Below, in pieces: positions 12,241-52,047 of a stretch of DNA of 64,000 nucleotides. The stretch's first letter is position 1. Each line of letters starts with the position of its first letter. Under the pieces are notes generated by a model that was given only the letters and a program-made list of their open reading frames with translations, did not search any database and was not told the DNA's origin. The translations under genes were made by a program, and so were the position numbers. The DNA is from Macrostomum lignano (taxonomy: Eukaryota): assembly GCA_002269645.1 (NCBI GenBank), contig NIVC01000291.1, positions 372,001 through 436,000 on the forward strand, given 5' to 3'.

Positions 12241-12319
12241 ACCCAATGCCGCGAGCCCCCTCATCCAGTGTAGCATGTCAGACATCCACAATGAGCTCGG
12301 GGGCTCACAGCGCCCGGTG

Positions 12320-24965
<12,646 letters not shown>

Positions 24966-26303: not shown

Positions 26304-27671
26304 CTATTCATCTTTGTCCTTTTCGAGCTCGTCGACTTCTTCCTCCTCACCCTCGACGCTGTCAACGCCAACTTCTTCGTAGTCCTTTTGCATGGACCCC
26401 AGGTCCTCCCGGGCCTCGGCAAACTCGCCCTCTTCCATGCCCTCGCCAACGTACCAATGGACGAAGGCGCGCTTCGAATAAAGCAGATCGAACTTGTACG
26501 CCAGTCGGTCCCAGGCCTCTGCAATGGCGGTGGTGTTGCTCAGCATACATACAGCGCGCGGCACCTTTGCCAGGTCCCCGCCTGGCACCGTGGTCGGCGG
26601 CTGATAGTTGATGCCCACCTTGAAGCCGGTGGGACACCAGTCAACAAATTGGATCTCACGCTTGCTCTTGATCTTCTGAATGGCTTCGTTCACGTCTTTC
26701 GATGAAACGTCACCGCGGTAAAGCAGACAGCAGGCCATGTACTTTCCGTGCCGCGGATCGCACTTTACCATCTGGTTGGAAGCCTCGAAGCAGGCGTTGG
26801 TAATCTCCTTCACCTTCAGTTGCTCATGGTGAGCCTTCTCGGTTGAGATGATTGGGGCGTACGTTGCTAGAGGGAAATGAATTTTCGGGTAAGGCACGAG
26901 GTTGGTTTGGAACTCGGTGATGTCAACATTGAGAGAGCCATCGAAGCGAAGCGACACGGTGATAGAGGAGACAATTTGACTGATAATGCGGTTCAAGTTT
27001 GTGTAGGTTGGCCGTTCAACGTCAAGGTTGCGCCGGCAGATGTCGTAAATGGCCTCGTTGTCAACCATGAAAGCGCAGTCCGAGTGTCGCAGGGTGCCGT
27101 GTGTGCATAGAATTGCGTTAAACGGTTCCACCACGGCTGTGGACACTTGGGGCGCCGGATAGACGGCAAACTGCAGCTTCGCTCGCTTTCCGTACTCAGA
27201 AGAGAGCTTGTCCATGAGCAGCGAGGTGAAGCCGGCTCCAGTGCCACCGCCGAACGAGTGAAACACCAGAAAGCCCTGCAGGCCGGCGCAGTTCTCCGCT
27301 ACTCGGTTGATGACCTCGCGAACGCTGCCCACGACTTCTTTGCCGATGGTGTAGTGGCCGCGTGCGTAGTTGTTCGCTGCATCCTCCTTGCCAGTGATGA
27401 GCTGCTCCGGGTGAAACAGCTGCCGGTAGGTGCCGGAGCGCACCTCGTCAATGACGGTCGGCTCCAGGTCAACAAAGACAGTCCGAGGCACGTAGTGACC
27501 GGAGCTGGTCTCCGAGAAAAATGCGTTGTACGAGTCGTCGCACTTCTCTCTACCAGCAGAAGCCATCAGGCCGTCTGGTTGGATACCATGCTCTAAGCAA
27601 TAAAGCTCCCAGCACGCGTTGCCAATCTGCACACCCGCTTGGCCAACGTGTATGGAGATGCACTCGCGCAT
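26304..27671 (-). CDS. TUBA: Alpha-tubulin, intronless and divergent (455 aa)
   Basis: [30 protein letters not shown] start; [43 protein letters not shown]; single uninterrupted ORF. Confidence 0.97.
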
Positions 27672-28027
27672 TTTGCTTTTGATTCGATAAACTAAAATTA
27701 GCAATATAGCCTATATCAGTAAATTCTTGAGCCGGTCTTGGGCACAAGTGCATGTTTAATGCTATTCCATTATCAAATAATACAGGTTGATAAAATCCCC
27801 AGGTGTCTATGGCTGCAGCTGGCTTCTCTCTTCCGGGGGCACGCGGATCCAGTTTATTTTCGGCATCCTGACTCTGTACTCAGCCGTCTATGGCTCTTAA
27901 CAGACCACATTCCATGCAAATTCTCATCCGATAGAAATTATGGGTAAACAACTACTGAAGCTGCATAGCAGTTCTGTGTTGATGTGCTAATTCTATCAAC
28001 AAAATACGTTCGAAAATCTCCAGCGCT

Positions 28028-31000: not shown

Positions 31001-34000
31001 TCCCCGACAGGAAAATCGGGCTCTGCATCTGGCGCTACCCGCTTCAGGTCAGTGCAGTGCCGCCTGCAAACTCTGGCGCCCTGCCGAATGGTCATCGAGT
31101 CGCCCTTGACACTCTCGACCAGCCAGGGTGTCCACTCGAACGGAGTCTCGCCCTTGAGCGGATTTAGTCGGCGCCGGAGCACCGTGTCGCCGACTTTGAG
31201 CCCATGCGGTCTCGCCTGCCGTCGCTTGTCCGTGTAGCGCTTGCCCTTTGCCTTGCTGCTGGCGTCCTGCTGTCGGAGCCTCCTGTCTGCGATGGCCACC
31301 GGTCTCGACGGCCTGATTGACGGGATGGCGTCGTTTGGGACGCGACCCAAGAGCAGCTCGGCTGGTGCCCGGTTGGTGGTTCGCTGCGGCGTGCAACGGT
31401 AGGCCAGCAGCCACTCGTCAAGGGCCGCCCTCCAGTCGCGCTTCTGGGCAATGGCAGCTCGTACAACCTTATTGATGGAGCGGTTCAGGCGCTCAGTGAT
31501 GCCGTTGGCCTGCGGATGCAGCGGTGTGATGAGACGCTGCCGGATTCCGTAGCTGTCCAGAAAGCCTTTGAACTGGGCCGAGGAGAATGGCGGGCCGTTA
31601 TCGGTGACCAGTACCTGTGGGATGCCGAATCTGGCGAACGAATTCCTCAGCTTGGGAATCAGCGCTTCGGCCGTTGTGGTCTGGACGATCTCGACTTCAG
31701 GGAAGCGCGAGTAGTGGTCAACGCAGACGAGCAGCATGCTGCCTTGAATGGGGCCTAGCAGGTCTGCCCCTAGTGTTAGCCATGCAGCTTTCGGGATCGG
31801 CGTCGGCTTCAGCGGCGCGGTGGTCACGTCGGCCGCGTGCGACGTAGCTGCACAGGCTCGGCAGGCACGCACGAAGAGCTCTGCTTCTGTCTGCATCCTC
31901 GGCCACCAGACTTTGGTGCTCAAACGGTCAACCGTCTTGCGCAGGCACTGATGACCGCGGTGTGCCAGGTCCAAAACCAGGCGCCGAAGCGCCATTGGAA
32001 CTACGATTCTCTGGCCCCGCAGGAGCACGCCGTCTGCTGCCGATAGCTCATTCCGTAGGGCGTGGAGCGATCGCGTCTCCGCCAACTCGAGGCTCCATCG
32101 TCCTGTCTCCAGCGATCGAATAGCGGCTTGAATTGTTGCATCTCGCAGCGAACTCTCTTGCACTGAGGACAGCGACAGCGCGTTCGGTATGGCCGCCTGG
32201 ACGATTGCAGCGATGCAGAGGGTGTCGAGCTCTTCGCCGACATTTCTTCCTCGTGTTGGCAGCGGCTGCCGGCTCAGCACGTCCGCTGGGTTTAGTGGGC
32301 CAGGCTGGTATTCGACTGTAAATTTCATGTGCTGAATGCGCAGCGCCATTCTTTCGATCCTCGGGGAGGCCTTGAGCCACTGCTGAACAATGCGATGAGC
32401 GGCTTGTGGTCTGTCACCACCGTAAATGTCGGAGCGCCGTGCAGATAGTACTGAAATTTCAAGCAGCCGTATTTGACGGCCAGCGCCTCCTTCTCAGTCT
32501 GGGTGTAGCGCTGCTCAACATCGGACAGCGTCCGGCTGGCGTACGCGACAGGCCGGTTGGTGCCGTCCGCTTGCGTCTGCGTTAGGATCGCGCCCAGGCC
32601 CGCTGGGCCGGCGTCGACGATGAGTTGCGTCGCTAGGCGGTGGTTGAAGAAGGCGAGGGTGCCGCTGGTCGCAATCCGGGTCTTCACGTCGTCAAAAGCT
32701 CGTTTCTCGAGGTCGGTCCATGCCCAGGGCTCGCCTTTCCTAGTCAGATTGCGCAGTGGCCTCGCTACATCCGCCAGCCCGGGGGTGAATGAGGCCAGAT
32801 AGTTGACCAGGCCTAGGAACGAGCGCACCTCTGTGGCAGTCTTTGGCTCGGCAAATGCATGGATGGCTTCCAACTTGGACTGGGTTGGTCTGACACCTTC
32901 ACTGGACAGCTGCATCCCCATGAACGTGACCTCGGTACGGGCGAGCTTGCATTTTAACGGATTCAGCGTCAGCCCGTGCTGCGCCAGTCGTCGCAGACAT
33001 GCCTGCAGGTTGCTGTGGTGCTCCGCCACGCTATGCCCATACACGTGAATCTCGTCGTGAATCCATTTTACTTTCGGGAGTCCAGCTAGCACGGATGACA
33101 TGACCGCCTGGAGAATTTCCTGGGCCGTAGACAGTCCCATACAGAGCCGTGTCAGCCGCCGCAGGCCTCGTGGTGTCGAAAAAGTCAGAAGATGGCGGCA
33201 TTCGTCGGCGACTGGGATTTGATAAAATGCCTTCGCGATGTCGAGCTCTGAGAATAGCTGCGCTCCTGCCATGTCTCCCGTCACCTCCTCGAATGTCGGG
33301 ATGGGATGCCGCTCTCTGATGACCGACTTGTTCAGGTCTCTCAAGTCCTGCGTAATCCTGATCTCGCCTGGAGTCTGCTTGGGCACGACGACGATGCGGG
33401 CTACCCACGGACAGGGGCCTTCCACCGGCTCGATGATGCCTTGGTCCTCGAGGCACTGCAGCTCGGCGTCGACTGCCTGTGCGAGATGTATTGGAACCCT
33501 TGATGGGGATGACAGATCGGCCTGGCTCCCTCCTCCAGGAAGATGCGGGCGGCATAGTTTTTGAGCCTGCCGATTCCGCTGAAGACTTGTGGGTTCTCCG
33601 TTAGGAGTTCGTGCAGGGCCGGTGCCCCCGGCGCATGTAGGACGTCCTTTGGGATCCCTGTTAGCATGCTGTCTAGCGAGACCTCGGGAGACGGACGCAG
33701 CTGGCATGCCACCTTGTTCTCCGGGCCGACTCGCAGAATCTGAAGTCTTTCAGCGCTTCTCCGGCCAATGATGCAAGCGCCCTCACCGTCGAGCACCAAG
33801 AACGGTAGTGTCTCGTGGATCTCGAACACGCTGACTTGCAGGTCTGCCTTGCCCAGCAATCTCAGCGGCTCTTGGCTTCCGTATGGGTAGACCTTGTCGC
33901 TGGCGGGCTGCAGCGCGGCTTTTTGCGGCATCCTGTCGTAGGCCGCCCTGTCGATGATGTTGCATGCCGCGCCGCTGTCGATGAGCACCTTTGTCTTGAG

Positions 34001-36191
34001 CCCGTTAATTGTCGCAAGCGTCCAAGTAGAGCCGTAGTTCCTCAGGGTGAATAGCTCGTGCTCGATGGGGTCGTCTTGCAGATATTCGACTCGACCCGGC
34101 GGAGCCTCCTCCTGCGGTTCGTCAACGGTCCTCAGAGGGACTTTAGCTGCTCCTCGACACGCCCGAGCGAAATGACCCATCTTGCCGCAGCGTCGACACG
34201 CCTTGTTACGGGCTGCCTCGCACGTCTGATGCCCTGGTCGCCCGCAGCGATCGCAGTTGATGCCGCTGTCTCTTGCCGCGGCAGCCGGCCTGGTTGTATG
34301 GGATGGTCGGTTATGAGGTGGACGCAGCGCCGCCACATTCGAAGCGGAAGGATGGCCCGTGTCGGCTGCGGCGCCGATCTCCATGGCCTGGGCCTGCTGC
34401 TCCGCTGCCTCACTCGCTCGGATTCGCTTCAAAACGTCGTCTAAGGAGACATCGTTGAGCTGCAGGAGTTCCCTCCTGATCCTCTCGGACCGGTAATGAG
34501 CCACGATCTTGTCCCTGATGAGCGAGTCTCGGAGTTCGCCGAACGTACATTGGTCCGCAGCCTTGCGTAGCCGATGATACCAGGCCTCAATTGACTCTCC
34601 TTCCTCCTGCCGGCATATTTCAAACTGGTACCTGAGGAAGACAACGCTGTTCTTTTGGTCGAAGATACCCTGCAACTTTTTGATGAGCTCCTCCGCGGAC
34701 TCTCCTTTCTTGACGCCGTTATCGTCCATGAAGTCTTCCAGCTTCTCGCCCGCAGTGTAAACTAAGAGCTCCAGCTGCTGTGTCGCATCTGTGATGCCAG
34801 CTGCGCGTATGTAGCTGTTGAACCTTCGCGTCCAGGTTTTCCATCGCTGAGCTCTTGTCAGAGGATCGCCTTCGAGGTCAAAAGCGTCTGGTGCCGCGAG
34901 TTGCAGGGCCTGTGCCATATTTGCTGAATCACCGGTCGTTATCAGTGCGCGGGGGGTTGGCCTCACTGAGAGTTTGCTTGCGACACTACAGCGTACACTA
35001 GAGCGTAGAGCGTACACTACATTCACAAAGATAACAGACATTCCCCTTAGCAAGTATCGATAGCAAGTATCGATCCTCCAGGTAGCAAACACCCTCCCCC
35101 TCCAAGAGTAAGCTAGCAAGCATATCAAGTACCCACCCAGATAGCAAGCACCCCCCCCCCCAGACAGCAAGCATCCCCCAGATAGCAAGCATCCCCCAGA
35201 TAGCAAGCATCCCCCAGATAGCAAGCATCCCCCAGATAGCAAGCATCCCCCAGATAGCAAGCATCCCCCAGATAGCAAGCATCCCCCCCAGATAGCAAGC
35301 ATCCCCCAGATAGCAAGCATCCCCTAGATAGCAAGCATCCCCCCCAGATAGCAAGCATCCCCCCAGATAGCAAGCATCCACCCAGATAGCAAGCATCCAC
35401 CCAGATAGCAAGCATCCCCCAGATAGCAAGCATCCCCCCCCCCAGATAGCAAGCATCCAACAGATAGCAAGCATCCTGCAGATAGCAAGCATCCCCCCCC
35501 CCAGATAGCAAGCATCACCCCCAGATAGCAAGCATCCCCCAGATAGCAAGCATCCCCCAGATAGCAAGCATCCCCCAGATAGCAAGCATCCTGCAGACAG
35601 CAAGCATCCACCCAGATAGCAAGCATCCCCCAGATAGCAAGCATCCTGCAGACAGCAAGCATCCCCCAGATAGCAAGCATCCCCCAGATAGCAAGCATCC
35701 TGCAGACAGCAAGCATCCTGCAGACAGCAAGCATCCACCCAGATAGCAAGCATCCACCCAGATAGCAAGCATCCTGCAGACAGCAAGCATCCCCCAGATA
35801 GCAAGCATCCTGCAGACAGCAAGCATCCACCCAGATAGCAAGCATCCTGCAGACAGCAAGCTGCAAAATAGATCAAAATAGATCACACATACCGACAGAC
35901 AGAAATACCGACAAACTACTTTTAGTTTAGCGTACGTACAATATTATTTAGTTGTAAATAGTAAAGCTGTACTTGGAGTAAATGTAATGAATATTGCAGC
36001 GCCTGCTCAACCACGTGTATCCGGAGCGCGGCGGCTCCACATCGCAAGCCATGGACCAGAACATCAAATGGGCGGACGCGGCCGTACAGGCGGTGGAGAT
36101 GAGCAAGGCACGGGACCTGGCCCGCTCCCAGATGCTGCAGTCGAGGCGCCTGGAGAGCGAGCCGCTCTACGCCAGGGCGGTGGGCGAATAG
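28028..36191 (+). CDS. Uncharacterised protein (~491 aa) with acidic/Gly low-complexity region and unknown C-terminal domain
   Basis: Phase-compatible exons 28028-28105, 28254-28468, 28777-29386, 29705-30085 and 36000-36191, with a possible upstream exon 27786-27943. The last three exons are well supported by GC3-rich codons and GT-AG sites; the 5' exons are less certain. An alternative start is the ATG at 28733. Confidence 0.6.
30913..34918 (-). mobile_element. Ty3/Gypsy LTR-retrotransposon gag-pol (PR-RT-RH-IN), frameshifted, no LTRs found, inside a host intron
   Basis: Gag MAQALQLAAPDAF...; zinc knuckle CRRCGKMGHFARAC; protease LIDSGAACNII; RT LDIAKAFYQI and WIHDEIHVYG; RNase H VDAGPAGLGA, EKEALA, TDHKPL; integrase HRGH...CRAC, ADLLGP, TDNGPPF, GITERLNR. 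Frame changes at ~33505 and ~32363. Confidence 0.93.
35130..35860. repeat. ~17-19-bp minisatellite (CAGATAGCAAGCATCCCC variants)
   Basis: Tandem units adjoining the 5' end of the Gypsy element. Confidence 0.93.
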
Positions 36192-40007: not shown

Positions 40008-42606
40008 TCACAGCGGCATCAGGCGGATGCATCTGGGCGTCCAGTTGGTCCTGTCTGCCTCGTGCAGGCCCAGAGTTCGAATCTCGCTGCGCCGCGCATC
40101 GTCCACGAAGCTGCAGGCGCAGAACAGGATGCCGTTGACGGGCAGCCAGGCCAGCGGGCCGGGCAGCAACGCCGGGTCGCGGAAGTTGCCGACTTTTTCC
40201 AGCACGTCCCGGCGCAGCTGGTAGATCTGGATGCAGCGCTCGGCCAGCAGGGACAGGAACAGCAGGCCCAGCTTGTTGCAGGCCGCCACGTGCTTCGGTC
40301 CCCGACGGTAGGTCATTTGCAGGTTCTGGCGCAGCCGGCCGGAGTCGATCTCGATCACCTGGACGGCCTCGTCTGTCTGGGCAATCACTGCCAGGTTGCT
40401 CAGGGTGCACATCTCCGTTGGCGAGGATAGCGGATGGTAGCCGCTGAACGGGTGCCGACTCCACGGTGTAAGGCGGGGCAGCTCGTACACCTGGATGAAG
40501 TAGTTGCCCTTCTGGTCGTTGCCCGGCTTGCAGGTAGCGATGTAGGCGATCCGCTCGTACACTGCCATGGCCAGGATGGGGAAGCGGCGCTCGCTCATGG
40601 ACAAGCGAACTCCGTCCGGCCGAATCACCTAGCGGAGGATTTTATGCGGCCAGTTTAGCCAAACAAACTATTGAGCTAGTTAACTTTAGATCAGCAAATG
40701 CTCCGTGTCCTGTACTCTCTGTTCTCCGTGTCCTGTACTCTCTGTTCTCCGTGTCCTGTACTCTCTGTTCTCCGTGTCCTGTACTCTCTGTTCTCCGTGT
40801 CCTGTACTCTCTGTTCTCCGTGTCCTGTACTCTCTGTTCTCCGTGTCCTGTACTCTCTGTTCTCCGTGTCCTGTACTCTCTTTTCTCCGTGACCTGTACT
40901 CTCTGTTCTCCGTGTCCTGTACTCTCTGTTCTCCGTGTCCTGTACTCTCTGTTCTCCGTGTCCTGTACTCTGTGCTCTCTGTGTCATGTACTCAATGCTC
41001 CGTGTCCTGTACTCTCGGTTCTCCGTGTCCATTACTCAATGCTCCGTGTCCTGTACTCTCGGTTCTCCGTGTCCATTACTCAATGCTACGTGTCCTGTAC
41101 TCAATACAAACCTGCAAATTGCACGTGGTCGCTACCAGCAGATGTCCGGAGGGCAGCACGCAGGCGGAACGGGCCCAGATGCGCCAGTCGAGGCGCCTGC
41201 TAGCCGCCAAGTCGTCCCCGGAGAAGGTGACGGAGCGGAAGCAGATGCCTCTGCTCGGCTCCGCGCAGATGAGCCGCCGGCCTACGGGGTCAAAGGAGAG
41301 AGAGATCACCGGCTCGGGGAGGCGGCAGGCCATCAGCTGCGTCAGCGCCAAAATTGACTTTGGACCTGGCGGAGGCGGGTTCGGCAGCAGCGGCAACGGC
41401 CGAGCCGCTTTGGGAGGCGGAAGCTGCTGGTGGTGCTGCATCGTGAGCTGATGCTCCTGCTGCTTCAGGCGAGCTCTCTGCTGTTTTGCCTTCGCCGAAT
41501 CGTCCAGCGGATCCGGCAGGTGCAGGGCCAGTTGCGGCAGGCGCCTCGTGGACTCCAAGTTGCTGCCTGCGGACAGCGGCTCGTCGGACGGGCGAATTTC
41601 CAAGGTTGATAGCTCTTGCTGCTCACCAGCCTGCTGCTCACCAGTTTGCTGCTCACCAGCTTGCTGCTCACCAGCTTGCTGCTCACCAGTTGGCTGCTCA
41701 CCAGCTTGCTGCTCACCAGTTTGCTGCTCACCAGCTTGCTGCTCACCAGCCTGCTGCTCACCAGTTTTCTGCTCACCAGCTTGCTGCTCACCAGCCTGCT
41801 GCTCACCAGCTTGCTGCTCCTGCTCGTCAGATTTCTGCTCCCGCTTATCGATCGGAAGGTGCAGTCGCAATGCCACCGCATCGAGACTAGCTTCGTCGTG
41901 ACCAGGATCCCTTTAGTTCCATCAACACAGTTATCGAACGCTTGATTATTTGAAACTCGCACTGATGCTCCCTCATCAGTACTATATGCTGCAAATTAGG
42001 TTCTAAATTGGTGCAAACACAAAAAGCAGCTCACCGCATCGCTGACTGGCGCTGAGAATCCCTGGCGGCTGCCAGGCTGCTGGAGTTCCGCAGGCTGCAG
42101 TCCAGCAGCGTCACAGACGAGGAGTTGTCACTATCGTCGGCGCCCTCCGTCTCCTCCAGGATCTCCCAGCCTTCTTCGCCTTCGTCAGCTTCGCGACTGG
42201 CCAGCAGCTGCCGGAGACGACGCTGGGCCGCCTCCAGCCGCTGGAGCTGCTGCCGGGCGCCGCGACCCAGGCCGAGAAGACGCCTTCGCCGGCGAAGTCT
42301 ATGAAGCAGCCGCATGTACTCGGAGATGTCCAGCTGCTCCAAGCTGCTCTGCCCCTGGCTGCGGTCCGCGCCAACTGGAGCCGCCGTTGCAGTCTTTGTG
42401 CTGGTCATCAGACTCCTTGTAGCCCTAGTCATAGTTTTGGTCCTCATCTGCCCGTTGGCTGGTCTCGGTGGCGACAAATCCAGCATCATCTCGAGCTGAA
42501 GCCAGTCATCGCGGGACACCGATGACGCGCTGGAGCCGGACTCAGATTCGTTGAAGTTATCCCTGCTTTTGTGGACGTCGACTTGAGTGACCACTTCGCA
42601 GTCCAT
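40008..42606 (-). CDS. Uncharacterised protein (~655 aa): coiled coil, QQAGE repeats, Pro-rich linker, putative beta-propeller (NHL/WD40-like) C-terminus
   Basis: Exons 42606-42035, 41886-41112 and 40628-40008 join in phase with GT-AG sites. The C-terminal half has repeated short beta-strand-like segments (ISLSFDP.GRRLICA, GHLLVAT, YFIQVYEL, VQVIEIDSG, IQIYQL). The fold call is by eye. Confidence 0.7.
40698..41100. repeat. 23-bp minisatellite (TGTTCTCCGTGTCCTGTACTCTC), intronic
   Basis: Tandem units filling intron 2 of the 40008-42606 gene. Confidence 0.95.
41620..41820 (-). repeat. 15-bp coding minisatellite encoding (E)QQAG/QQTG pentapeptides
   Basis: In-frame within exon 2; about 13 units. 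Confidence 0.85.
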
Positions 42607-42934
42607 TCTGTCGTGAGCGGCCGCGGTTCCTCCCGCTGAACTATTTTGGTGCGAAAATCAGGGCCTGCGGCTGGCAGCCTCATCAGCTTCTCTATGGGCC
42701 AGGGTCTTCTGCAGAAGCGAACCAGTGCCACAGAGATTAACTCAAACTGCTATTTTCGAAGCATAAATATGCAAATGGTTTAATTATAAAACTCGTGGCA
42801 ACTTGGCCGGCAGGGTGCGGGGGTGGAGTTGCATTTCTGTGTCGTTTCTCACTCTCTCTTTCTCGCTGATTGTACTTTGCTATCGCGGGGTGGAGGCGCT
42901 AGGGTGAGTCAGGGGCGATTGACAGTACATGATT

Positions 42935-43790
42935 CTCACTGGCTAGTGTGACTCACTGACTAGTGTGACTCTCACCACTAGTGTGACTCTAACTGACTAG
43001 TGTGATTCTCACCGACTAGTGTGATTCTCACTGACTAGTGTGATTCTCACCGACTAGTGTGATTCTCACCGACTAGTGTGACTCTCACTGACTAGTTTGA
43101 CTCTCACCGACTAGTGTGATTCTCACCGACTAGTGTGACTCTCACTGGCTAGTGTGATTCTCACCGACTAGTGTGACTCTCACTGACTAGTGTGACTCTC
43201 ACCGACTAGTGTGACTCTCACTGGCTAGTGTGATTCTCACCGACTAGTGTGACTCTAACTGACTAGTGTGATTCTCACCGACTAGTGTGATTCTCACTGA
43301 CTAGTGTGACTCTCACTGACTAGTTTGACTCTCACCGACTAGTGTGACTCTCACTGGCTAGTGTGATTCTCACCGACTAGTGTGACTCTAACTGACTAGT
43401 GTGATTCTCACCGACTAGTGTGATTCTCACTGACTAGTGTGACTCTCACTGACTAGTTTGACTCTCACCGACTAGTGTGACTCTCACTGGCTAGTGTGAT
43501 TCTCACCGACTAGTGTGATTCTCACTGACTAGTGTGATTCTCACTGACTAGTGTGACTCTAACTGACTAGTGTGATTCTCACCGACTAGTGTGATTCTCA
43601 CTGACTAGTGTGATTCTCACCGACTAGTGTGATTCTCACCGACTAGTGTGACTCCCACTGACTAGTTTGACTCTCACTGGCTAGTGTGATTCTCACCGAC
43701 TAGTGTGACTCTCACTGACTAATGTGATTCTCACTGGCTAGTGTGACTCTCACTGACTAGTGTGCTTCTCACTGTCTAGTGTGACTCTCA
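42935..43790. repeat. 19-bp minisatellite (GACTAGTGTGATTCTCACC variants)
   Basis: About 45 tandem units, each containing ACTAGT. Confidence 0.95.
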
Positions 43791-45029
43791 CAGACTGGGC
43801 CACCTCCATCTTTTCAGATCCTAAATTTCAGGGCCATCGCCACCTTCAGATCCTCTGCACGGGCCCATACTCCACAGAGTCCTCAGTTGGACTTTCCAAT
43901 AGTATGCTTCAGCTCTCAGCTTCATTTGAAAAACACAGTCCAGTTTTTCTGAAACGTTGTTTATCGCAGAGCTTATCTCAGTAAAAAACCTTATTACCCA
44001 TACTGTATATTATTATTGATGCATAATGCATAACTAACTAGTATTTCGTGTACAGTACATAGCACCAAGCTTTGTATTTGCTTCAGGTCATTATCATTTC
44101 GCACTCATTGATGAGAGCCATCAGCTCCAACTCCAGCATCAACTTCTACATCATCTAGCTTTTTGGCGGCGTGAAAGAGAGCCTTTACGCTTTTGCACTG
44201 TTTGCGCTGTGCCGGTCAAACTTCAAATTAACCAATACGAAACTGCCGCTCAACAGTTGAATGCCGGTTGCCGATGCCCGGTTTATTTACTGAACGGAAA
44301 GAGCTACATCTAGGTCGATAATCTAGTAGTAGTAGTAGTAGTAGATCTAAGCAATATGATAAACTTGATCAGAAGAACTCTAACTGCTAGATTCTAAATA
44401 ACAACAACTATTAGTAGTTAAAAAGCTAATATTGTAATAATAACCATAAAGAGATACAACCATTGCGAAATATTGTTGTTCAAAGCTGGAGCGAATGCGG
44501 AATCATAAAAGCTGGGAGTAAATCATTCGTTATGATTTGTGAACAACCAGAATGAGGGCAAGGACTTCTAGGCTAGAAGGACGCTGCACTCGGCATGCCA
44601 GCGGGAGAAGTTGGTATTATTTAATTTATTAATTTTTCTCGTAAACGCGAGTTTCTTTCCGAACAAACGCCTATAATTCAGCAAATTCTCAAACATCTGC
44701 GAGTGCAGCGCCCTGGGTGCAGTGCAGTCAGCGACATCCTTAGTGGCTCTTGAATTGACTGTGAATAACTATTTGTTGCACTTCACTGCTTGTAAAATGT
44801 TAATAATTATAAATAGGGTTAAAGCATGTTACCAACACTGATTGCGTGAATGAGACTAGCTAAACGTCTAGCTGAACTTTCTAAAAAGTGCAAAAATTAT
44901 AGCGAAAATCTGCCAGCTCTAGGTGGCGAAGTACAGGATGAAAGATGACAAAACTAAAATGAATCCGTGTCTGAATCCGTTCTGCAATCTGATTGCAGAA
45001 TTTTATCATTGATTATCCCTGACTCCCAA

Positions 45030-45145
45030 AGTGGCTCCCCTGACACACAGAGTGGCTCCCCTGACACCCAGGGTGGCTCCCCCTGACACCCAGAGTGGCT
45101 CCCTGACACACAGAGTGGCTCCCTGACACACAGAGTGGCTCCCCC
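45030..45145. repeat. ~22-bp short tandem repeat (GTGGCTCCCCTGACACACAGA)
   Basis: About 5 units. Confidence 0.85.
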
Positions 45146-45245: not shown

Positions 45246-48200
45246 TCAAATCGGTGCCTCCCGAGACTCCACCAGGATCTCGTTGACGCCCACGTGCGGC
45301 GGCTGCTGCACAGCGTACAGAATCGCCCTGGCGACGTCCTCCGGCTCAAGCATGGTGTACTTGCCCTGCCCGCTGAACTCCTTGTGCGCTTCCGAATCCG
45401 CGTCGTCCCGGCAGGCCTGCAGTTGAGCAAAGGAGATGCGGGTCATCGGGGTCGGAGCGGAGAATTGAGATAAGTGGATGGAGTTGAATTTTAGCATTAA
45501 AGCCATTCTTTTCTCTGTGGCGAAAATACAGCAGCGAAATTATCAACACAACCGGCGAGAGGCATTGCTGCCCATTCCGCCGACTCCCCCGAGCAGGCAC
45601 ACAAGCGCGCGGATACGTACGCAGTCATACGCGCAGACACACCCTCACACAGGAGTGTACAGCGGCCCTGAGTTTCTAATCTTCAGGCATGTACACTTCA
45701 CTGTGCCCTGGGGGTTGGCCCTCAAGGGTGTTAATTCCACGAGTAGAGCCAAGCCGATATTCCAGTTTAGCCCCAAATTAATGTGACCACACTTGGAATC
45801 GAGCCCGGGCCGCTGGCACATCAGAGTGACTGGGGAATTGCGACCGATGAACGCTAATCAAAATACGCTTGTTCAGCACTTCCTAGCTCCCATTGTCCCT
45901 TTCGGAAGATAGAAGCTTCACAAAATAGGAAATTTCATATCAACGAACAATCTACCGAAGAACTCTCTATAGCTTAACAGTAACGTTTATTTGCCATTTC
46001 GTGCTTTTGAAGTCTCGAGCAAATGAAAGGGCCGGAAAGTCTTTTTCGAGCTTGTGAAACGCTCTCTACCGTCCCTCTACAGTCATCACAGTAGGCACTC
46101 TGACTCAGCTTGCGAGGGAAAACCTGCCAGCCAGAATGAGAAGCATTAGAAATCCAGTGCCTCTTGTTCTCAAAACCTGCTCACCTGCAGCGGAGTTCTC
46201 ACGTCCCCGGGCTGCACGCAGGTGACGCGAAGGCCTCGACTCGCCACCTCGAGGCGCAGGGCCCTGGAGTAGCCTTCCACGAAGAATTTGGAGCCCGTGT
46301 ACACGGCCAAGCCCGGAAACGGAGCCCGACCAGCGTCGCTGCTCAAGTTGACGATGTGGCCGCCACCCCTGTCCAGCATGATGGGCAGCACGGCCTCCAC
46401 CGTGTGCACCAGGCCTCGGCAGTTGACGTCGATGGTGCGGTCGGTGAGGTGCGTCAGGCCGCTGAACGCCCTGGTATAGTACATCACCCCGGCGCTGTTC
46501 ACCAGGATGTCCGGCTGGCCGAGCAGCGACCGGCAGCGCGCCACGGCGGCCTCGACCTCGGCGCGGGAGGTCACGTCGGCTGGGCAGGCGACCGCCACGC
46601 CCTGCGCAGCCAGAATGCCTTGGCGCACCTGCTCCAGCTGGTCAGCGCGCCTGGCAACCAGCGCCACCTGGCAGCCGTCTCTAGCCAGGGCCTGCGCTAC
46701 CGCCTGTGGTTGTTGGGAAACAGGGACTTTTGTGCATGACTTCGGACAGCAAGCTCACTAGATGCAGGATGTTGTCTTCTTAATGCAACAATTGAAACCT
46801 CGGGATTCACATGGCGGACGGAAATTGTTGAACAATTATTGAGCTTTTCCCATTTAATTCTGAATGCGCTTTGGGACCAGGTGGAAGCTTTTTTACGGAA
46901 GAGAAATTATGGATAGATTTTAATTCGCTAATGGCGGACATCCAAAATACATTCTACTATACTTCGACGCTTTTAATTGTACAATTCTCTATTGACCTCT
47001 CATTCACTTGCAATACAGTGAGGTTCTGTTCGCACCTGTCCGATTCCGCTGCTGGCCCCGGTAACCATGGCAACCTTGCCTAGCAACGCTCCGCCGGAGG
47101 TGTTTCTCCTGGCCCGCGGCAGGAGGCCCCGCTCGGCCAGGCGGGCCACGTACACGGCCAGCAGGCTGGACTCGATGGCCGGATATCCGCTCTCCAAGCC
47201 CAGGCTGGGCAGAGCAGCACGCAGCTGCCTCGAGTCAAAGGTGCTGAGCTGCCCAAAGTACTGGGATCCGCCAGACGGGGCCAGCTCCTCCAACAGGCGC
47301 AGCAGCGATGCGATTGGCTGGCAGGCCTCAGCTAGTTGCCGCAGCTCCACCAGCCAATCAGCGTAGTCCACGCGGCGCAAGGTATAGCCGCTAACCGACA
47401 ACCAATCGCAGAGCAGGTCAAAGCTGATTGGCTGCGGATTAACCAGGTGAAAAATCTTGCCAGCGTGCAGGCTGAGCTGGGCCATGGCGCGCACGATGAC
47501 CTCGCTGGTAAAGTCTACCGGAGTGAACTCCAAGCGCCAGTTGAGACGGGGCGCCTGCCCACTGCGTAGCACACCCTGAAAGTCGGTGAGTAGCAAAAAG
47601 TGCTTAGTAAGTGTTCTTTCAGGAACTGCACCAGTACGCACAGCCACTCGGCAAGATAACTATGTCCATTGATACCCCCGTGGGTCCACAGCAGCAACCA
47701 ACCTGCAGCATGAGCAGCGTCAGGTCCTGCGGGTTCCAGGCGGCGTTGGCCCGGTCCCCGGCTTGGTTGCCCAGCCGGTACACGATCACCGGCATGCCTC
47801 GGGCCCGAGCCTTCATGAGCAGCTGCTCGGCCACCCATTTGGTCTGGCTGTATCCGTCGGCGAGTTCTTGAGCGTGGACGCTGGTGTCGGCGTCCTCGCG
47901 GCAGTCGGCCAGACCGTTCGGAAACACAGCGTCGGTGCTGACATAGTGCACTGGCTTGACGCGGACCGCTGACGCAAACAGGATCACGTTCTGCGTGCCC
48001 AGCACGTTCGGTCCGTACAGAGCCTGTGAATGGTCGGAATTCAGTGCACTTTTTCTGGTTTTGTCGGTCTGTGAGTGACTGCAGAGGGCTAGCAGAGCAA
48101 CTAGCATGCGCTAAAACAGCAAATAAGGAGAGTCCCTCACCGTGTACGGGTAAATAAGGTTTACGTAGGCACCAGCGTGAATCACTACGTCGATCTCGCT

Positions 48201-51200
48201 GCTCAGGAAGGCGTAGTCATCCTCTGAGAGGCCGAACTTCACCAGGCTGAGGTCTCCTGCGAATGGCGTCAGTTTTTAACAATGAGAATTGCAGTTTTCT
48301 TAGAAAACAGGTCTTGACTTCGCCAGCTTCGCCCTGATTTGCCGACACCAGGATAGGAGAAACTCTGAGGCTTCTTATATGTCTGAAATTCCCTACAGGT
48401 AGGTCGGGTTGCCCAAAACTCCAATGCGAACTTTGCAACCAGCAGCGCACTCACCCCTAATAACGGTCACCCGGGCTTCAAAAGCAGCCGCAAGGTCCTT
48501 TGTTTGATCATCCTCCTGTCCTTTGGGCCGCAAGATGAGGAACTGCTCTAGGGTAGATCTCAGCCTCCGCTGCAGGCCCCCAGGGTCGCCGCTTCCGGTC
48601 TCGCGAACCAAACAGAAGACTTGCGTTTCGGTGAGGCGCAGCAGGTCGCGCAACAGGAAGGCGCCAAGGAAGCCAGTAGCGCCGGTTAGAAGGACGCGGC
48701 CGCGGGACCAGCGCGACTTGTTGAAGTGCGGGTTGCGCCAGAATGCGCGCAGCTGGATATCCAGGCTGCCGAATGATTTGGCATGTGAGATTGGGTTAGG
48801 CACAATACTGACATTGTCGCGACTTTCCTATTCATTTCTTAGTTCACCTTCACTTGTCTCTGTTTACTCTGTTTTCTCTCTCTCTCTGTCTAGCTCAATC
48901 TTGTTATTCTTATCTCTCTTTCCCTTACTGCCTTCTGATTGGCTCTCCATTCTCGCCTCTCTCTTCAGTCGCGCACTCCACTCCCTCTCCTTATTATTCT
49001 GGGCTCAACCCCCCAAAGTTAAATGTTCAATAAATATATCGGTTTGGGCCCTGCGCCCACTTACTGGCTCCTTTAGTATTCAATTTAACATCTAATTTAG
49101 TTCTAGTGTTTTTAGTCTTATTTTCTCTACAGGCATAAAACAGGCAGGTAGGCAGATTCCAACGGCTCACTCTGAAGCCTGCGGCTGGTCATGATTGGCC
49201 ACCTCGGTTTTCAAATCGAAGGTTCTCGCCTCGGCCTCCGGCGTTTCGTCGGCGGTCCCAGTGCCCCGCGCCGCCGCAGCGTCGATCAGGCGGGCCATCT
49301 CCTGCACCGTGGGGTATTGGAACAGCTCCTTCACGGACAGCTGGCAGCCCAGCTGCTCGTTCACCTTTGAGAGCAGCTTTGTCGCTAGCAGGGAGTGGCT
49401 GGAAAACGGCGATGGTTTGGCTGCTGTGGACTGGGATTTGCCTGCGAACTTGGGTCTTTCTGCTTTGGAAAATTAAAGCAAACTGAGATCATTTTGCCCT
49501 GATCTGTTCAAAATACAAATCTTCGAAAAAATGACCTACAGTTGCTATACGAAGTCAGCCTATCTTACCCGCCGTAGTCGAAGAAGCTCTCCTGTATGTC
49601 GATCTCCTTGATGTCCAGTGTAGCCATCCAGATGGCCGCCAGGCTTTTCTCTGTGGCGGTCTGCGGCAGAAACGAGCAGTCCAGGCTCTCTTGGGCCTTG
49701 TCGAAGGGAGGCAGCGAGGCCTTGTCCAGCTTGCCGATCGCGCTTACGGGCAGGCTACGATGGGTGGGTAGTAAAATTTAATGACATAGGTACTGCGCTG
49801 CAACTCTGTGGCTGCTCATGGTTAGCACGCTCATGTGAGCAGGCTTCCTAAGTATTCTACACAGAATCGCACTCAGACAGGGGCTCACTCGGCCAGGAAG
49901 ACGAAGTAGCTTGGGATCATGTAGAACGGCAGCTTTCGTTTCAGAGCGGATCGCAGCTGCCTTTTTGTGAGGTCGCCGTTCGATGGAACAACGTACGCCA
50001 CAAGGAACTTGTCCTCGCCTTCGCCGCCCTTCACCAGCACCACACAGGCGTTGACGAGCCCGCTGTCCAGCAGGGCCACCTCGATCGCCTGAACCTCCAC
50101 GGAGTAGCCCCGGATTTTGACCATACTGTCGCAGCGACCGCAGATCTCCAGGCTGCTGTCCGAGAGCAGGTAGCCCCAGTCGCCTGTGCGGTACAGCCGC
50201 TCACCCGCCTGGCTGCCGAGGGCTTTCGGCGCCTGAATGAACTTGCTGCGATTCAGGTCTGGGCGCTTCACGTAGCCCTTGGCCAGGGTTGGCCCGGCCA
50301 CGTAGATCTGCGATCGAGCGGAAATGGGTTTGACAGATATACGAATGCAAGTAGTCAGTCTCGGCTCAGGGTTTTTGTAATTTTTGGTCGAAACTCTATA
50401 GTAATGTTGAATTACCTCTACCGGTCCCCAACGTTTGAACGGAACTCTTACCTCTCCAGCCGCCCCCACCGGCTGCGGATTGAGCGCTTCGTCTAAGATG
50501 ACCACCTGGACTCCTGGTAGCAGCCAGCCCACGGGGCAGAACTTGCGTCGTTCCTCCGGTCTGCGCTGAATCCGCTTCAGGTAATCCGTAAGATCTCTGG
50601 CGGCCACGTCGTGACACTCGGAGATACTGTACAGGTTGATGACGCGGGTGCTGGGCAGCAGTGATTGACAGCGCTCCAAGAGGCTTGTGGTAACCACCTC
50701 GCCGCAGAGCCAGATTTGCCTGTAAATGTTTTGGTGGTGTTTCAAAGTCGCTGTCATACAATCTGGGATCATGGAACGGTGTAACGTCTATTTATTACGG
50801 AGGTGTAGAAACATAGAAAATTTAAGACAGAAATTTTTAGTACGAACTTGAGGCTCGCGCAAGCCTTTTGAACTCTTTCCGCCTCCGAATCAAGCACCGT
50901 CTCCAGCAGTGACGGCGTGAACAGCATCCGGGTGATGCAGTTTTTCCGCATATACTCCAGCAGCTTTGGTGGATCGTAGATGACATCGTCGGGCACAACA
51001 TAAAGACATTGACCCTTCATCAGCGGACGCAGCATCTCCCATACAAAGAAAACGTTACAGGCTTCGCGCTCCGGTCCGTTGGACTCGTCATAAGGGTAAG
51101 TCACGTGACGCCAGTGGTAAGAAAAGACAGCACCGCGGTGCGGCATGCCGATGCCTTTCGGCTTGCCGGTGGTGCCGCTGGAGTATACGATGAAGGCGAG

Positions 51201-52047
51201 GGCGTCCAGATCGATGGAGACGGGGACGCAGCTGGTGTCGCATCGCAGCTCATTGAGTTCCTGTTGCCAGTTGTCAGAGAAGACCCACGCAAGGCTGCGC
51301 GCTGATTCAGGCAAGCGCTGTAGCAGGTCGGGTTTTGTCAGCACAGCACGAGGCTCAGCATCGGACAGGACGCTCTCGATTAGCGAGTCGGGGTAGGACA
51401 AGTCCATGGGGAGGTAGGCTCCACCTGCGAATGCGATATGGGCATTTAACAATAGTAACTTCTTTCAGATACTCGTAGCAAAATTTCAAAACAGACCGTT
51501 CGTTGTGTCTGATTTTACACGTACGTCTTCTACACCTACAGGGTAACACGTACGCCATATTCCTGCTCACGACGACACAGCAGGCTTTGTAAGCTTGAGC
51601 TGCTTGACCCCAGTTACTTCATGTAGTCTGTCAGTTACACTGAAAAGGACGCTTTCCAAATTTGGGCCTGCCTAGACCATCCCACCCTGGTCTTAAATCT
51701 TTCGTCAGCTTCAACTGATAATGCGCAGTCATCAAATCCGTATGGAGAATGAAAGACGATATTTAGTCGAGTAACTGACCGGCTTTGAGTATGGCAATGT
51801 AAGCCACCACATACTCGATGCATCTCTCCATGTAAATGATGCCGCAGAGCTCCACATCCAGACCCTTCAGCCGGAGCTCGGCGGCCAGTTTGCTGGACAG
51901 TTGATCCAGCTCCGCGTAGGTGAGTTGCCGTCCAGCTCCGTCCGAAACGGCGACTCGGTCTGGAGTCAGTTGAGCTTGCCTGTAGAACTGCTCGTGCAGG
52001 CTCCCCGCAGTTTGGTAGGACTCGGCTGCTGCTACTGGCGACGGCAT
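45246..52047 (-). CDS. NRPS-like A-T-R-SDR multidomain reductase (fungal ATRR/glycine betaine reductase architecture), 1307 aa, 12 exons
   Basis: Exons 52047-51780, 51424-50848, 50719-50452, 50307-49889, 49754-49569, 49398-49171, 48765-48455, 48256-48141, 48023-47703, 47575-47036, 46703-46185 and 45416-45246 total 3924 nt, all in phase. A domain: YSSGTTGKPKG, YRTGDWG, GRCDSMVKIRGYSVE, GKLDK. T domain: FFDYGGHSLL. R1: LTGATGFLG, STDAVF, GYSQTKWVAE. R2 (SDR): VTGASSGIG, LVNSAG, SSDAG, YTGSK. Confidence 0.93.

What the first reader, a model, noticed from the sequence alone, without database searches (positions are those of the whole stretch)
45246..52047. Intact, spliced ATRR-type NRPS-like reductase (A-T-R-SDR) in an animal genome: candidate betaine-to-choline pathway
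Seen: 12 GT-AG exons join in phase into a 1307-aa protein ordered adenylation, carrier (GGHS serine), thioester reductase (GxxGxxG, YxxxK) and a second SDR reductase (TGASSGIG, YTGSK). There is no condensation domain, and all catalytic motifs are intact. Established: this A-T-R-R order is that of the Aspergillus nidulans ATRR enzyme, which reduces glycine betaine via the aldehyde to choline using ATP and two NADPH. Textbook animal metabolism runs only choline to betaine. Characterised animal NRPS-like enzymes (Ebony, AASDH, schistosome BATT synthetase, nematode nemamide PKS-NRPS) have other architectures. Inference: this animal may recover choline from its betaine osmolyte pool, or reduce another small acid to an alcohol. 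The 11 introns show long residence in a eukaryotic genome.
Basis: partly seen in the sequence, partly recalled or inferred. Interest (0 to 1): 0.9.

Follow-up and report, generated by a model that had tools for sequence, protein, structure and literature searches.

The report
Flatworm ATRR-type betaine reductase gene

Summary
On the minus strand, 12 GT-AG exons (52047..45246) join into a 3924-nt ORF encoding 1307 aa. The domains are adenylation, carrier, thioester reductase and SDR reductase, with no condensation domain.

The protein is 100% identical to a Macrostomum lignano UniProt entry that is auto-named 'Fatty acid synthase'. Full-length orthologues of about 50% identity occur in placozoans, cnidarians, acoels, annelids, molluscs, nemerteans, echinoderms, hemichordates, tunicates, hemimetabolous insects and nematodes. 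NCBI already names two of them 'glycine betaine reductase ATRR(-like)'.

Eight of the 11 introns sit at the same codon and phase as introns in Trichoplax and/or Capitella, so this is an old, vertically inherited animal gene.

The substrate pocket keeps the features that define the characterised Aspergillus enzyme. D235 is lost (V214). The aromatic cage is F215/W218/W285 and the acidic residue is D319, with spacing matching F201/W204/W270/E304. All R1 and R2 catalytic residues are present.

Betaine-to-choline reduction is therefore the best-supported function, but it is not proven. The novelty was overstated. Hai et al. (2019) noted invertebrate ATRRs, Zhang et al. (2024) studied a nematode ATRR functionally, and a 2025 paper mentions the mollusc homologue. 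Interest is modest.

The parts
45246..52047 (-). Whole ATRR-like gene from start codon to stop codon: 12 exons, 11 GT-AG introns, 1307 aa
   Evidence: The protein is 100% identical to M. lignano UniRef A0A1I8I4I0.
51780..52047 (-). Exon 1 (aa 1-89 plus 1 nt). It holds the ATG at 52047-52045 and ends inside the A2 motif KAG|GAYLP. The phase-1 intron after it is shared with Capitella.
50848..51424 (-). Exon 2. It encodes the A3 motif YSSGTTGKPKG and the A4 region CNVFFVWEM, which carries pocket residues V214 (PheA 235), F215 (236; codon 51050-51048) and W218 (239; codon 51041-51039). The phase-2 intron after it is shared with Capitella.
50452..50719 (-). Exon 3. It encodes pocket residues W285 (PheA 299; codon 50712-50710), C287, L311, D319 (PheA 330; codon 50610-50608) and V320. 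The phase-0 intron after it is shared with Trichoplax and Capitella.
49889..50307 (-). Exon 4. It encodes A-domain motifs A6-A9 (IYVAGPTLAKGY, YRTGD, GRCDSMVKIRGYSVE). The phase-2 intron after it is shared with Trichoplax and Capitella.
49569..49754 (-). Exon 5. It encodes the A10 motif with K519 (PheA K517; codon 49732-49730) and the start of the carrier domain up to FFDYGG. The phase-2 intron, which lies inside the GG|HS motif, is shared with Trichoplax and Capitella.
49171..49398 (-). Exon 6. It encodes the phosphopantetheine-attachment Ser575 (codon 49394-49392), the rest of the carrier domain and the linker. The phase-2 intron is shared with Trichoplax.
48455..48765 (-). Exon 7. It encodes the N-terminus of R1 with the NADPH-binding motif LLTGATGFLG (aa 674-683). 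The phase-1 intron is shared with Trichoplax.
48141..48256 (-). Exon 8, part of R1 (GDLSLVKFGLSEDDY...). The phase-0 intron is shared with Trichoplax and Capitella.
47703..48023 (-). Exon 9. It encodes the R1 catalytic Y849/K853 (codons 47852-47850 and 47840-47838) in DGYSQTKW. The intron after it is not shared with either of the two species compared.
47036..47575 (-). Exon 10. It encodes the R1 C-terminal subdomain, the R1-R2 linker and the start of R2 with TGASSGIG (G1071; codon 47059-47057). The intron after it is not shared.
46185..46703 (-). Exon 11. It encodes the R2 SDR core, with S1200 and Y1213/K1217 (YTGSK; codons 46301-46299 and 46289-46287). The intron after it is not shared.
45246..45416 (-). 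Exon 12. It encodes the R2 C-terminus, ending ...ESREAPI followed by the stop codon (45248-45246). The A. nidulans ATRR C-terminus is ...PRDEPI*.

Best explanation
The locus is the Macrostomum lignano orthologue of ATRR, a single-polypeptide, NRPS-like carboxylic-acid reductase. The proposed mechanism has four steps. The A domain (aa 21-519) adenylates glycine betaine with ATP, holding its trimethylammonium head in an aromatic cage (F215, W218, W285) next to an acidic residue (D319). The betainoyl group is then moved to the phosphopantetheine arm on Ser575 of the carrier domain. R1 (aa ~672-1051; Y849/K853) uses NADPH to release glycine betaine aldehyde. R2, a classical SDR (aa 1065-1301; G1071, S1200, Y1213, K1217), uses a second NADPH to reduce the aldehyde to choline. 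The following are shown here: the gene structure, the domain order, the intact catalytic residues, the pocket residues, the orthology to other animal ATRRs and the ancient shared introns. The following are inferred: the substrate (glycine betaine), the product (choline) and the physiological role, which would be regenerating choline from a betaine pool or limiting betaine excess.
For: Architecture: A-T-R1-R2 with no C domain. Nearest solved relatives fit the proposed chemistry. For the A-T part they are NRPS A-T modules such as LgrA and TycA. For R1 it is the thioester reductase MxaA (1e-70). For R2 it is the NADPH aldehyde reductase clavaldehyde dehydrogenase (9e-42). Pocket: I confirmed PheA numbering on PDB 1amu. 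Reading the code from the alignment, with the A4 stretch re-registered by hand, gives V-F-W-L-W-C-L-D-V-K. D235 is therefore lost, as in AnATRR. F215/W218/W285/D319 have spacings of 3/67/34, against 3/66/34 for F201/W204/W270/E304 in AnATRR. Peptides of AnATRR recovered from the published primers match locally: LLDGYGQTKW against ADGYSQTKW, VVTGASSGI against MVTGASSGI, GLGVYSASKF against GLAVYTGSKF, and C-terminus PRDEPI* against SREAPI*. The G-to-Y spacing in R2 is 142 in both proteins. Across the 120 closest homologues F236, D330, K517 and the carrier Ser are invariant in every sequence covering the column, W239 is W in 114 of 115 (one Y), and this exact 10-residue code is the commonest one. 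The orthologues include the plant-parasitic nematode clade (Heterodera, Globodera, Bursaphelenchus, 44-45% identity). The Meloidogyne member of that clade relieves betaine toxicity in yeast and gives betaine/choline-dependent RNAi phenotypes. NCBI names the Haliotis and Nematostella orthologues glycine betaine reductase ATRR. The coral orthologue is present as an uninterrupted transcript contig.
Against: No enzymatic data exist for this protein, and the papers I read report no in-vitro assay for any animal ATRR. The nematode evidence is indirect, resting on yeast growth and RNAi. I could not retrieve a fungal ATRR sequence, so the pocket equivalences rest on PheA numbering plus matching spacings and not on a direct alignment. 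The acidic residue is Asp rather than Glu. According to Zhang et al., only 5 of 10 pocket residues are identical between plant-parasitic nematode ATRRs and AnATRR. Position 299 varies among animal and protist homologues (W 68, I 21, V 12, L 9, H 5 and others), which leaves room for different or broader substrates in the family. I did not check expression of this particular M. lignano gene.
Confidence: 0.65

Rival explanations
1. The enzyme has the same machinery and the same acid-to-aldehyde-to-alcohol chemistry, but a different physiological substrate. Candidates are another small cationic acid, for example dimethylglycine, a sulfonium analogue or another betaine common in invertebrates.
For: About half of the 10 pocket residues differ between the nematode and fungal enzymes. 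Position 299 varies across animal and protist ATRRs. The acidic residue is Asp here rather than Glu. AnATRR itself has weak activity on sulfobetaine and dimethylglycine.
Against: Macrostomum keeps all three cage aromatics, including W at position 299 as in the fungal enzyme, and an acidic residue at the same spacing. AnATRR is strictly size-selective and rejects beta-alanine betaine, DMSP and carnitine. The nematode phenotypes respond specifically to glycine betaine and choline.
Confidence: 0.22
2. The locus is a generic NRPS-like carboxylic acid or amino-acid reductase of the Lys2, CAR or fatty-acyl reductase type. This is what the database auto-names suggest ('Fatty acid synthase', 'L-2-aminoadipate reductase', 'linear gramicidin synthase subunit D').
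For: Those names are attached to this protein and its homologues. A-T-R is the core of Lys2 and of CARs.
Against: The names are automatic transfers from shared domains. The protein has a fused second SDR reductase that Lys2 and CARs lack. It lacks D235, which binds the alpha-amino group. It has no KS, AT or C domains. Its best solved A-domain relatives are NRPS amino-acid-type A domains, and no CAR or fatty-acyl ligase appears among the top 60.
Confidence: 0.05
3. The locus is not a functional animal gene. It would then be a contaminant, a recent horizontal transfer that is not expressed, or a decaying duplicate in the duplicated M. lignano genome.
For: M. lignano carries a second, 99%-identical gene model (P0002) that is truncated and carries junk N-terminal sequence. 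I did not check expression of this copy, and the look-up of encoding contigs has no record of it.
Against: The 1307-codon frame is intact across 12 exons and every catalytic residue is present. Eight of 11 intron positions and phases are shared with Trichoplax and/or Capitella. In a neighbour-joining tree the protein sits inside Metazoa. The flanking sequence is typical repeat-rich animal DNA with a tubulin gene and a Ty3/gypsy-type element. GC3 of 78% against intron GC of 45% fits a selected coding sequence.
Confidence: 0.05

Closest known systems
Aspergillus nidulans ATRR (AN5318.2; glycine betaine reductase; Hai, Huang & Tang 2019, bioRxiv 10.1101/559534 / PNAS 116:10348)
   Same: The domain order A-T-R1-R2 is the same. 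D235 is lost in both. The cage F/W/W plus an acidic residue has the same spacing. The catalytic Tyr of R1 and the Gly and Tyr of R2 sit in near-identical local sequence, and the C-termini are similar.
   Different: This gene is animal and has 11 introns. The acidic pocket residue is Asp where the fungal enzyme has Glu. Overall identity is probably about one third, since 32.6% is reported for the nematode enzyme against the fungal one. The other pocket positions could not be compared directly, and there is no biochemistry for this protein.
MiATRR of Meloidogyne incognita and other plant-parasitic nematode ATRRs (Zhang et al. 2024, PMC11050029)
   Same: It is an animal-encoded A-T-R1-R2 protein of almost the same length (1306 aa against 1307 aa). 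The cyst-nematode and Bursaphelenchus orthologues are 44-45% identical to this protein over the full length, and 9 of the 10 pocket positions are identical.
   Different: The plant-parasitic nematodes have His or Ile at pocket position 299, whereas Macrostomum has Trp like the fungal enzyme. The proposed role in nematodes is exploiting host-plant betaine during parasitism, whereas Macrostomum is a free-living marine flatworm.
Uncharacterised 'glycine betaine reductase ATRR(-like)' genes of molluscs, cnidarians, echinoderms, hemichordates, tunicates, placozoans and hemimetabolous insects (RefSeq names; mentioned in PMC11869996)
   Same: They are 49-53% identical over the full length and have the same domains. 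The commonest pocket code among them, VFWLWCLDVK, is the code found here. Intron positions are shared with Trichoplax and Capitella.
   Different: This gene has fewer introns (11, against 22 in Capitella and 27 in Trichoplax), and three of its introns are not shared with those two species. It is the only platyhelminth sequence among the top 120 hits.
Terminal thioester reductases of NRPS/PKS (MxaA, PDB 4u7w) and mollusc FmtATR
   Same: The R1 domain is homologous to MxaA (1e-70). These enzymes also carry out NADPH-dependent reductive release from a carrier thioester.
   Different: Those reductases carry out both two-electron steps in one R domain. Here, as in ATRR, a separate fused SDR domain is present for the aldehyde step.

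Membership tests
ATRR (NRPS-like glycine betaine reductase) | Single polypeptide with domain order A - T - R1 (thioester reductase) - R2 (classical SDR), and no condensation domain | tested here: met
   Pfam: AMP-binding 21-383 and 446-519, PP-binding 549-611, NAD_binding_4 675-925, adh_short 1065-1253. No PF00668 (condensation domain) hit.
ATRR (NRPS-like glycine betaine reductase) | Loss of the alpha-amino-binding Asp (PheA D235) in the A domain | tested here: met
   The residue at position 235 is V214. PheA numbering was verified on 1amu, the A4 stretch was registered as CNVFFVWEM against SFDASVWEM, and position 235 is V or I in all homologues.
ATRR (NRPS-like glycine betaine reductase) | Aromatic cage equivalent to AnATRR F201, W204 and W270 | tested here: met
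   F215, W218 and W285 lie at PheA positions 236, 239 and 299, with spacings of 3 and 67 against 3 and 66 in AnATRR. Caveat: the equivalence comes from numbering and spacing, not from a direct alignment with AnATRR.
ATRR (NRPS-like glycine betaine reductase) | Acidic residue next to the cage (AnATRR E304) | tested here: met
   D319 (PheA position 330) lies 34 residues after the cage Trp, exactly as E304 lies 34 residues after W270. It is Asp where AnATRR has Glu. Asp is present in all 119 homologues that cover the column.
ATRR (NRPS-like glycine betaine reductase) | Phosphopantetheinylated Ser in the T domain | tested here: met
   The GGHSL motif contains Ser575, and the Ser is conserved in 120 of 120 homologues. 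The modification itself cannot be tested here.
ATRR (NRPS-like glycine betaine reductase) | R1 catalytic Tyr (AnATRR Y811) and NADPH-binding motif | tested here: met
   Y849/K853 lie in DGYSQTKW, against LLDGYGQTKW in the AnATRR primer-derived peptide. The NADPH-binding motif TGATGFLG starts at residue 676.
ATRR (NRPS-like glycine betaine reductase) | R2 NADPH-binding Gly (G1036) and catalytic Tyr (Y1178) | tested here: met
   G1071 lies in VTGASSGIG and Y1213 in VYTGSKF. The Gly-to-Tyr spacing is 142 in both proteins, and the local sequences match the AnATRR primer-derived peptides.
ATRR (NRPS-like glycine betaine reductase) | Sequence-level orthology to the characterised fungal enzyme (direct alignment or phylogeny with outgroups Lys2, CAR, Ebony and AASDH) | tested here: inconclusive
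   Two attempts to retrieve a fungal ATRR failed. The support is indirect only: RefSeq names on the orthologues and the 32.6% identity reported between nematode and fungal ATRR.
ATRR (NRPS-like glycine betaine reductase) | [quoted passage not shown] | not testable with these tools
   This requires an enzyme assay or isotope tracing.
Canonical NRPS module | A condensation domain that forms a peptide bond | tested here: not met
   There is no condensation-domain hit in Pfam.
Lys2-type alpha-aminoadipate reductase / bacterial CAR | A-T-R architecture ending at the thioester reductase, with the aldehyde as product | tested here: not met
   An additional complete SDR domain (1065-1301) is fused C-terminally. 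The Asp that would bind the alpha-amino group is absent.
Ebony / Sm-NRPS type animal NRPS-like enzymes | A-T followed by an amine-selecting condensing domain, with no reductases | tested here: not met
   The region C-terminal to the T domain consists of two reductase domains.

The most novel reading that the evidence does not exclude
ATRR may be an ancestral metazoan enzyme. It is shared by placozoans, cnidarians, acoels, spiralians, ambulacrarians, tunicates, some insects and some nematodes, and its intron positions are conserved. If so, it would give most invertebrates a reversible choline-betaine cycle, letting them draw choline from their betaine pool. Its apparent absence from vertebrates, holometabolous insects and clade V nematodes among the close homologues seen here could then be part of why choline is a dietary requirement in those lineages. 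Macrostomum lignano, which is amenable to RNAi and transgenesis, would be a convenient animal in which to prove this.
Probability: 0.4. Interest if true: 0.55.

Novelty: new member of a known kind. Interest (0 to 1): 0.3.

Why it matters
If the enzyme works as predicted, the flatworm can run the textbook one-way choline-to-betaine route in reverse, at the cost of one ATP and two NADPH. That would link osmolyte storage to phospholipid and acetylcholine supply. The idea itself is already published for fungi (2019) and proposed for nematodes (2024). This locus adds three things: a clean, complete platyhelminth member whose pocket is closer to the fungal enzyme than the nematode pocket is; evidence from shared introns that the gene is ancient and vertically inherited in animals; and a correction of a misleading database name ('Fatty acid synthase'). 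No in-vitro assay of an animal ATRR was found in the papers consulted, so the first one could reasonably be done with this protein.

Tried and rejected
(1) I ran the search of protein representatives with aa 1-1150 to reach fungal ATRR. The accepted job returned only multimodular NRPSs of 4.5-7.9 kaa, whose several A domains add up to higher scores, so it was of no use.

(2) I recovered A. nidulans ATRR peptides from the primer table of Hai et al. and used the concatenated peptides as a word-seed query. The peptides were still useful for local comparison.

(3) The PNAS version (PMC6535007) is not held, and the 10-AA-code figures in both ATRR papers are images. The full fungal code could therefore not be read.

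(4) The look-up of encoding contigs has no record for the Macrostomum protein or for the Acropora millepora orthologue. I used Trichoplax, Capitella and an Acropora palmata transcript contig instead.

(5) MAFFT misplaced the short PheA A4 stretch against an upstream PYD/E motif. I rejected that placement in favour of the ungapped register anchored on VWEM, which also reproduces the F-x-x-W spacing reported for AnATRR.

(6) A literature search for Macrostomum plus choline or betaine returned only nutrition papers.

(7) I considered reading intron 3 as coding sequence, because it is in frame with no stop. I rejected this because orthologues have no insertion there and share an intron at that site.

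(8) I checked for further copies in the window. tblastn finds only this one locus.

(9) Several long 'ORFs' elsewhere in the window turned out to be translated minisatellites and not genes.
Full report

Yes, and exactly as described. I listed stop-free stretches on the minus strand between 45000 and 52300 and joined them at GT/AG sites. This gives 12 exons: 52047-51780, 51424-50848, 50719-50452, 50307-49889, 49754-49569, 49398-49171, 48765-48455, 48256-48141, 48023-47703, 47575-47036, 46703-46185 and 45416-45246. The 11 introns are 117-768 nt long and all are GT..AG. The CDS is 3924 nt and encodes 1307 aa with a single terminal stop.

Exon GC is 62.4% against 45.3% in introns, and GC3 is 78%. 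Ten introns contain an in-frame stop or shift the frame. Intron 3 (144 nt) could be read through. However, it interrupts the A6 core motif (GE|IYVAGPTLAKGY), no orthologue has an insertion there, and Trichoplax and Capitella both have a phase-0 intron at that column. tblastn of the protein against the window finds only this locus.

**2. What is it?**

Pfam gives the following hits:
- AMP-binding at 21-383 (2e-68)
- AMP-binding_C at 446-519
- PP-binding at 549-611
- NAD_binding_4 at 675-925 (2e-54)
- adh_short at 1065-1253 (4e-52)

There is no condensation domain. Against solved structures, the A-T part resembles NRPS modules such as LgrA and TycA. R1 resembles the terminal thioester reductase MxaA (1e-70). 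R2 resembles the NADPH-dependent clavaldehyde (clavulanic acid) dehydrogenase (9e-42).

The catalytic residues are all present: Ser575 in GGHSL, TGATGFLG and Y849/K853 in R1, and G1071, S1200 and Y1213/K1217 in R2.

**3. Whose gene is it?**

The protein is 100% identical over its full length to UniRef A0A1I8I4I0 of Macrostomum lignano, a free-living marine flatworm, where it is auto-named 'Fatty acid synthase'. A second M. lignano model, P0002, is 99% identical. It is truncated, lacks six residues at the exon 3/4 junction and carries junk N-terminal sequence. It is most simply a poorly predicted duplicate or allele.

The rest of the window looks like repeat-rich animal DNA. It contains an intronless tubulin ORF, the ORFs of a Ty3/gypsy-type element and many minisatellites. 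No metabolically related neighbour is evident. Hai et al. also found no conserved gene neighbourhood for atrr in fungi.

**4. Relatives and history**

Full-length homologues of 45-53% identity with the same domains occur in many groups:
- Placozoa, Cnidaria and Acoela
- Annelida, Mollusca, Nemertea and Brachiopoda
- Echinodermata, Hemichordata and Tunicata
- hemimetabolous insects and nematodes
- stramenopile protists

Two orthologues, from Haliotis and Nematostella, are already named 'glycine betaine reductase ATRR(-like)' by NCBI. An Acropora palmata orthologue is present as an uninterrupted transcript contig.

I mapped the introns of the Trichoplax sp. H2 gene (27 introns) and the Capitella teleta gene (22 introns) at nucleotide resolution and projected them on a protein alignment. 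Eight of the 11 Macrostomum introns fall on the same column and in the same phase as an intron in one or both species. Only the introns after aa 898, 1078 and 1251 are not shared. Trichoplax and Capitella share 15 positions with each other.

A neighbour-joining tree without support values places Macrostomum inside Metazoa. Molluscs, ambulacrarians, cnidarians and nematodes each group together, and the protists fall outside. The gene is therefore an old, vertically inherited animal gene and not a recent acquisition.

**5. Does the substrate pocket fit betaine?**

Hai, Huang and Tang explained the specificity of A. nidulans ATRR by two features. The first is loss of the alpha-amino-binding Asp (PheA D235). 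The second is an aromatic cage, F201/W204/W270, next to E304.

I verified PheA numbering against PDB 1amu and read the code in the flatworm protein. MAFFT misplaced the short PheA A4 stretch, so I set that part of the register by hand.

| PheA position | 235 | 236 | 239 | 278 | 299 | 301 | 322 | 330 | 331 | 517 |
|---|---|---|---|---|---|---|---|---|---|---|
| Flatworm residue | V214 | F215 | W218 | L257 | W285 | C287 | L311 | D319 | V320 | K519 |

The spacings F-to-W, W-to-W and W-to-acid are 3, 67 and 34. In AnATRR they are 3, 66 and 34. So all four named determinants are present, with Asp in place of Glu.

Among the 120 closest homologues, F236, D330, K517 and the carrier Ser are invariant in every sequence that covers the column, and W239 is W in 114 of 115 (one Y). 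VFWLWCLDVK is the commonest code, found in 32 sequences, with a further 18 carrying Ile at position 235. Position 299 varies: W 68, I 21, V 12, L 9 and H 5, where the H sequences include the plant-parasitic nematodes examined.

The primer table of Hai et al. yields true AnATRR peptides. Around Y811, G1036 and Y1178 and at the C-terminus they match the flatworm sequence closely. The Gly-to-Tyr spacing in R2 is 142 in both proteins.

**6. Mechanism**

By homology with the dissected fungal enzyme, the steps are as follows:
1. The A domain adenylates glycine betaine.
2. The acyl group is carried as a thioester on the phosphopantetheine of Ser575.
3. R1 performs one two-electron reduction to betaine aldehyde.
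4. R2 reduces the aldehyde to choline.

The parts list is shown here. The substrate and product are inferred. The main rival is the same chemistry on a related small cationic acid. Readings as Lys2, CAR, fatty acid synthase or canonical NRPS fail on architecture and pocket. A pseudogene or contaminant reading fails on the intact frame, the shared introns and the genomic context.

**7. What is known already**

Zhang et al. 2024 (PMC11050029) described A-T-R1-R2 genes across clade III and IV nematodes and cloned the 1306-aa MiATRR. They showed that it relieves betaine toxicity in yeast, and that its RNAi phenotypes are worsened by betaine and eased by choline.

The 2025 bursatellin paper refers to the molluscan glycine-betaine reductase homologue as a known, uncharacterised class.

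The 2023 survey 'Nonribosomal Peptide Synthetases in Animals' does not discuss this class in the passages I searched.

The finding is a new, well-supported member of a known kind.

**8. Limits**

I could not obtain a fungal ATRR sequence. There is therefore no direct alignment with the characterised enzyme and no phylogeny with outgroups. I did not check expression of this copy. There is no biochemistry for this protein, and the papers I read report no in-vitro assay of any animal ATRR.

**9. Verdict**

Interest is about 0.3. The value of the locus lies in the clean gene model, the evidence for ancient vertical inheritance, a pocket closer to the fungal enzyme than the nematode pocket is, and a tractable animal in which to test the pathway.

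Noticed in passing
window 30913-35320 (- strand): Three consecutive long ORFs carry a gag-like zinc knuckle (33401-35320), reverse transcriptase plus RNase H (32325-33707) and integrase (30913-32349). This is a Ty3/gypsy-type LTR retroelement about 10 kb from the ATRR gene. I did not look for LTRs or assess intactness.
   Followed up: partly
window 26304-27704 (- strand): A single uninterrupted ORF has complete Tubulin and Tubulin_C domains (2e-58 and 1e-51). It is an apparently intronless tubulin gene. I did not determine the isotype.
   Followed up: partly
window 6868-8548, 15616-16783, 13541-14308, 5313-6406, 11268-12242, 23452-24397, 42930-43796, 40701-41102: The window is packed with long, very regular minisatellite arrays, for example a 54-mer x31, a 24-mer x49, a 10-mer x77, a 28-mer x39 and a 19-mer x46. 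Several translate into long stop-free repeat 'proteins' on both strands, and these gave spurious Pfam hits (KMPT-N, HTH_7, Cornifin).
   Followed up: partly
window 21887-21997 and 9346-9485: There are short interstitial arrays of telomere-like repeats, (GTTAGG)n x19 and a degenerate AACCCTAA-type array, far from any sequence end.
   Followed up: no
window 45017-45144: A 20/42-nt tandem repeat (CCCTGACACACAGAGTGGCTC, about 6 copies) lies about 100 nt downstream of the ATRR stop codon, probably in or next to the 3' UTR.
   Followed up: no
window 13361-14476 (- strand): An ORF has a weak partial protein-kinase domain match (7e-06, below the Pfam cut-off) and overlaps the 10-mer array. It is possibly an exon fragment or an artefact.
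   Followed up: no
P0002 (second M. lignano gene model, not in this window): This is a 1652-aa UniProt model that is 99% identical over the A-T-R1 region. It lacks VGAAGE at the exon 3/4 junction, stops inside R1 and starts with about 700 aa of low-complexity sequence. It looks like a mis-predicted duplicate or allele. The UniProt name 'Fatty acid synthase' on both models is misleading.
   Followed up: partly
Alignment of the 120 closest homologues, pocket position 299 (aa 285 here): This is the only pocket position that varies widely among the homologues. Trp is commonest, His occurs in the plant-parasitic nematodes examined, and Ile, Val, Leu, Met and Thr occur in cephalopod, annelid, acoel, placozoan and protist sequences. 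This may mark differences in substrate tuning within the family.
   Followed up: partly
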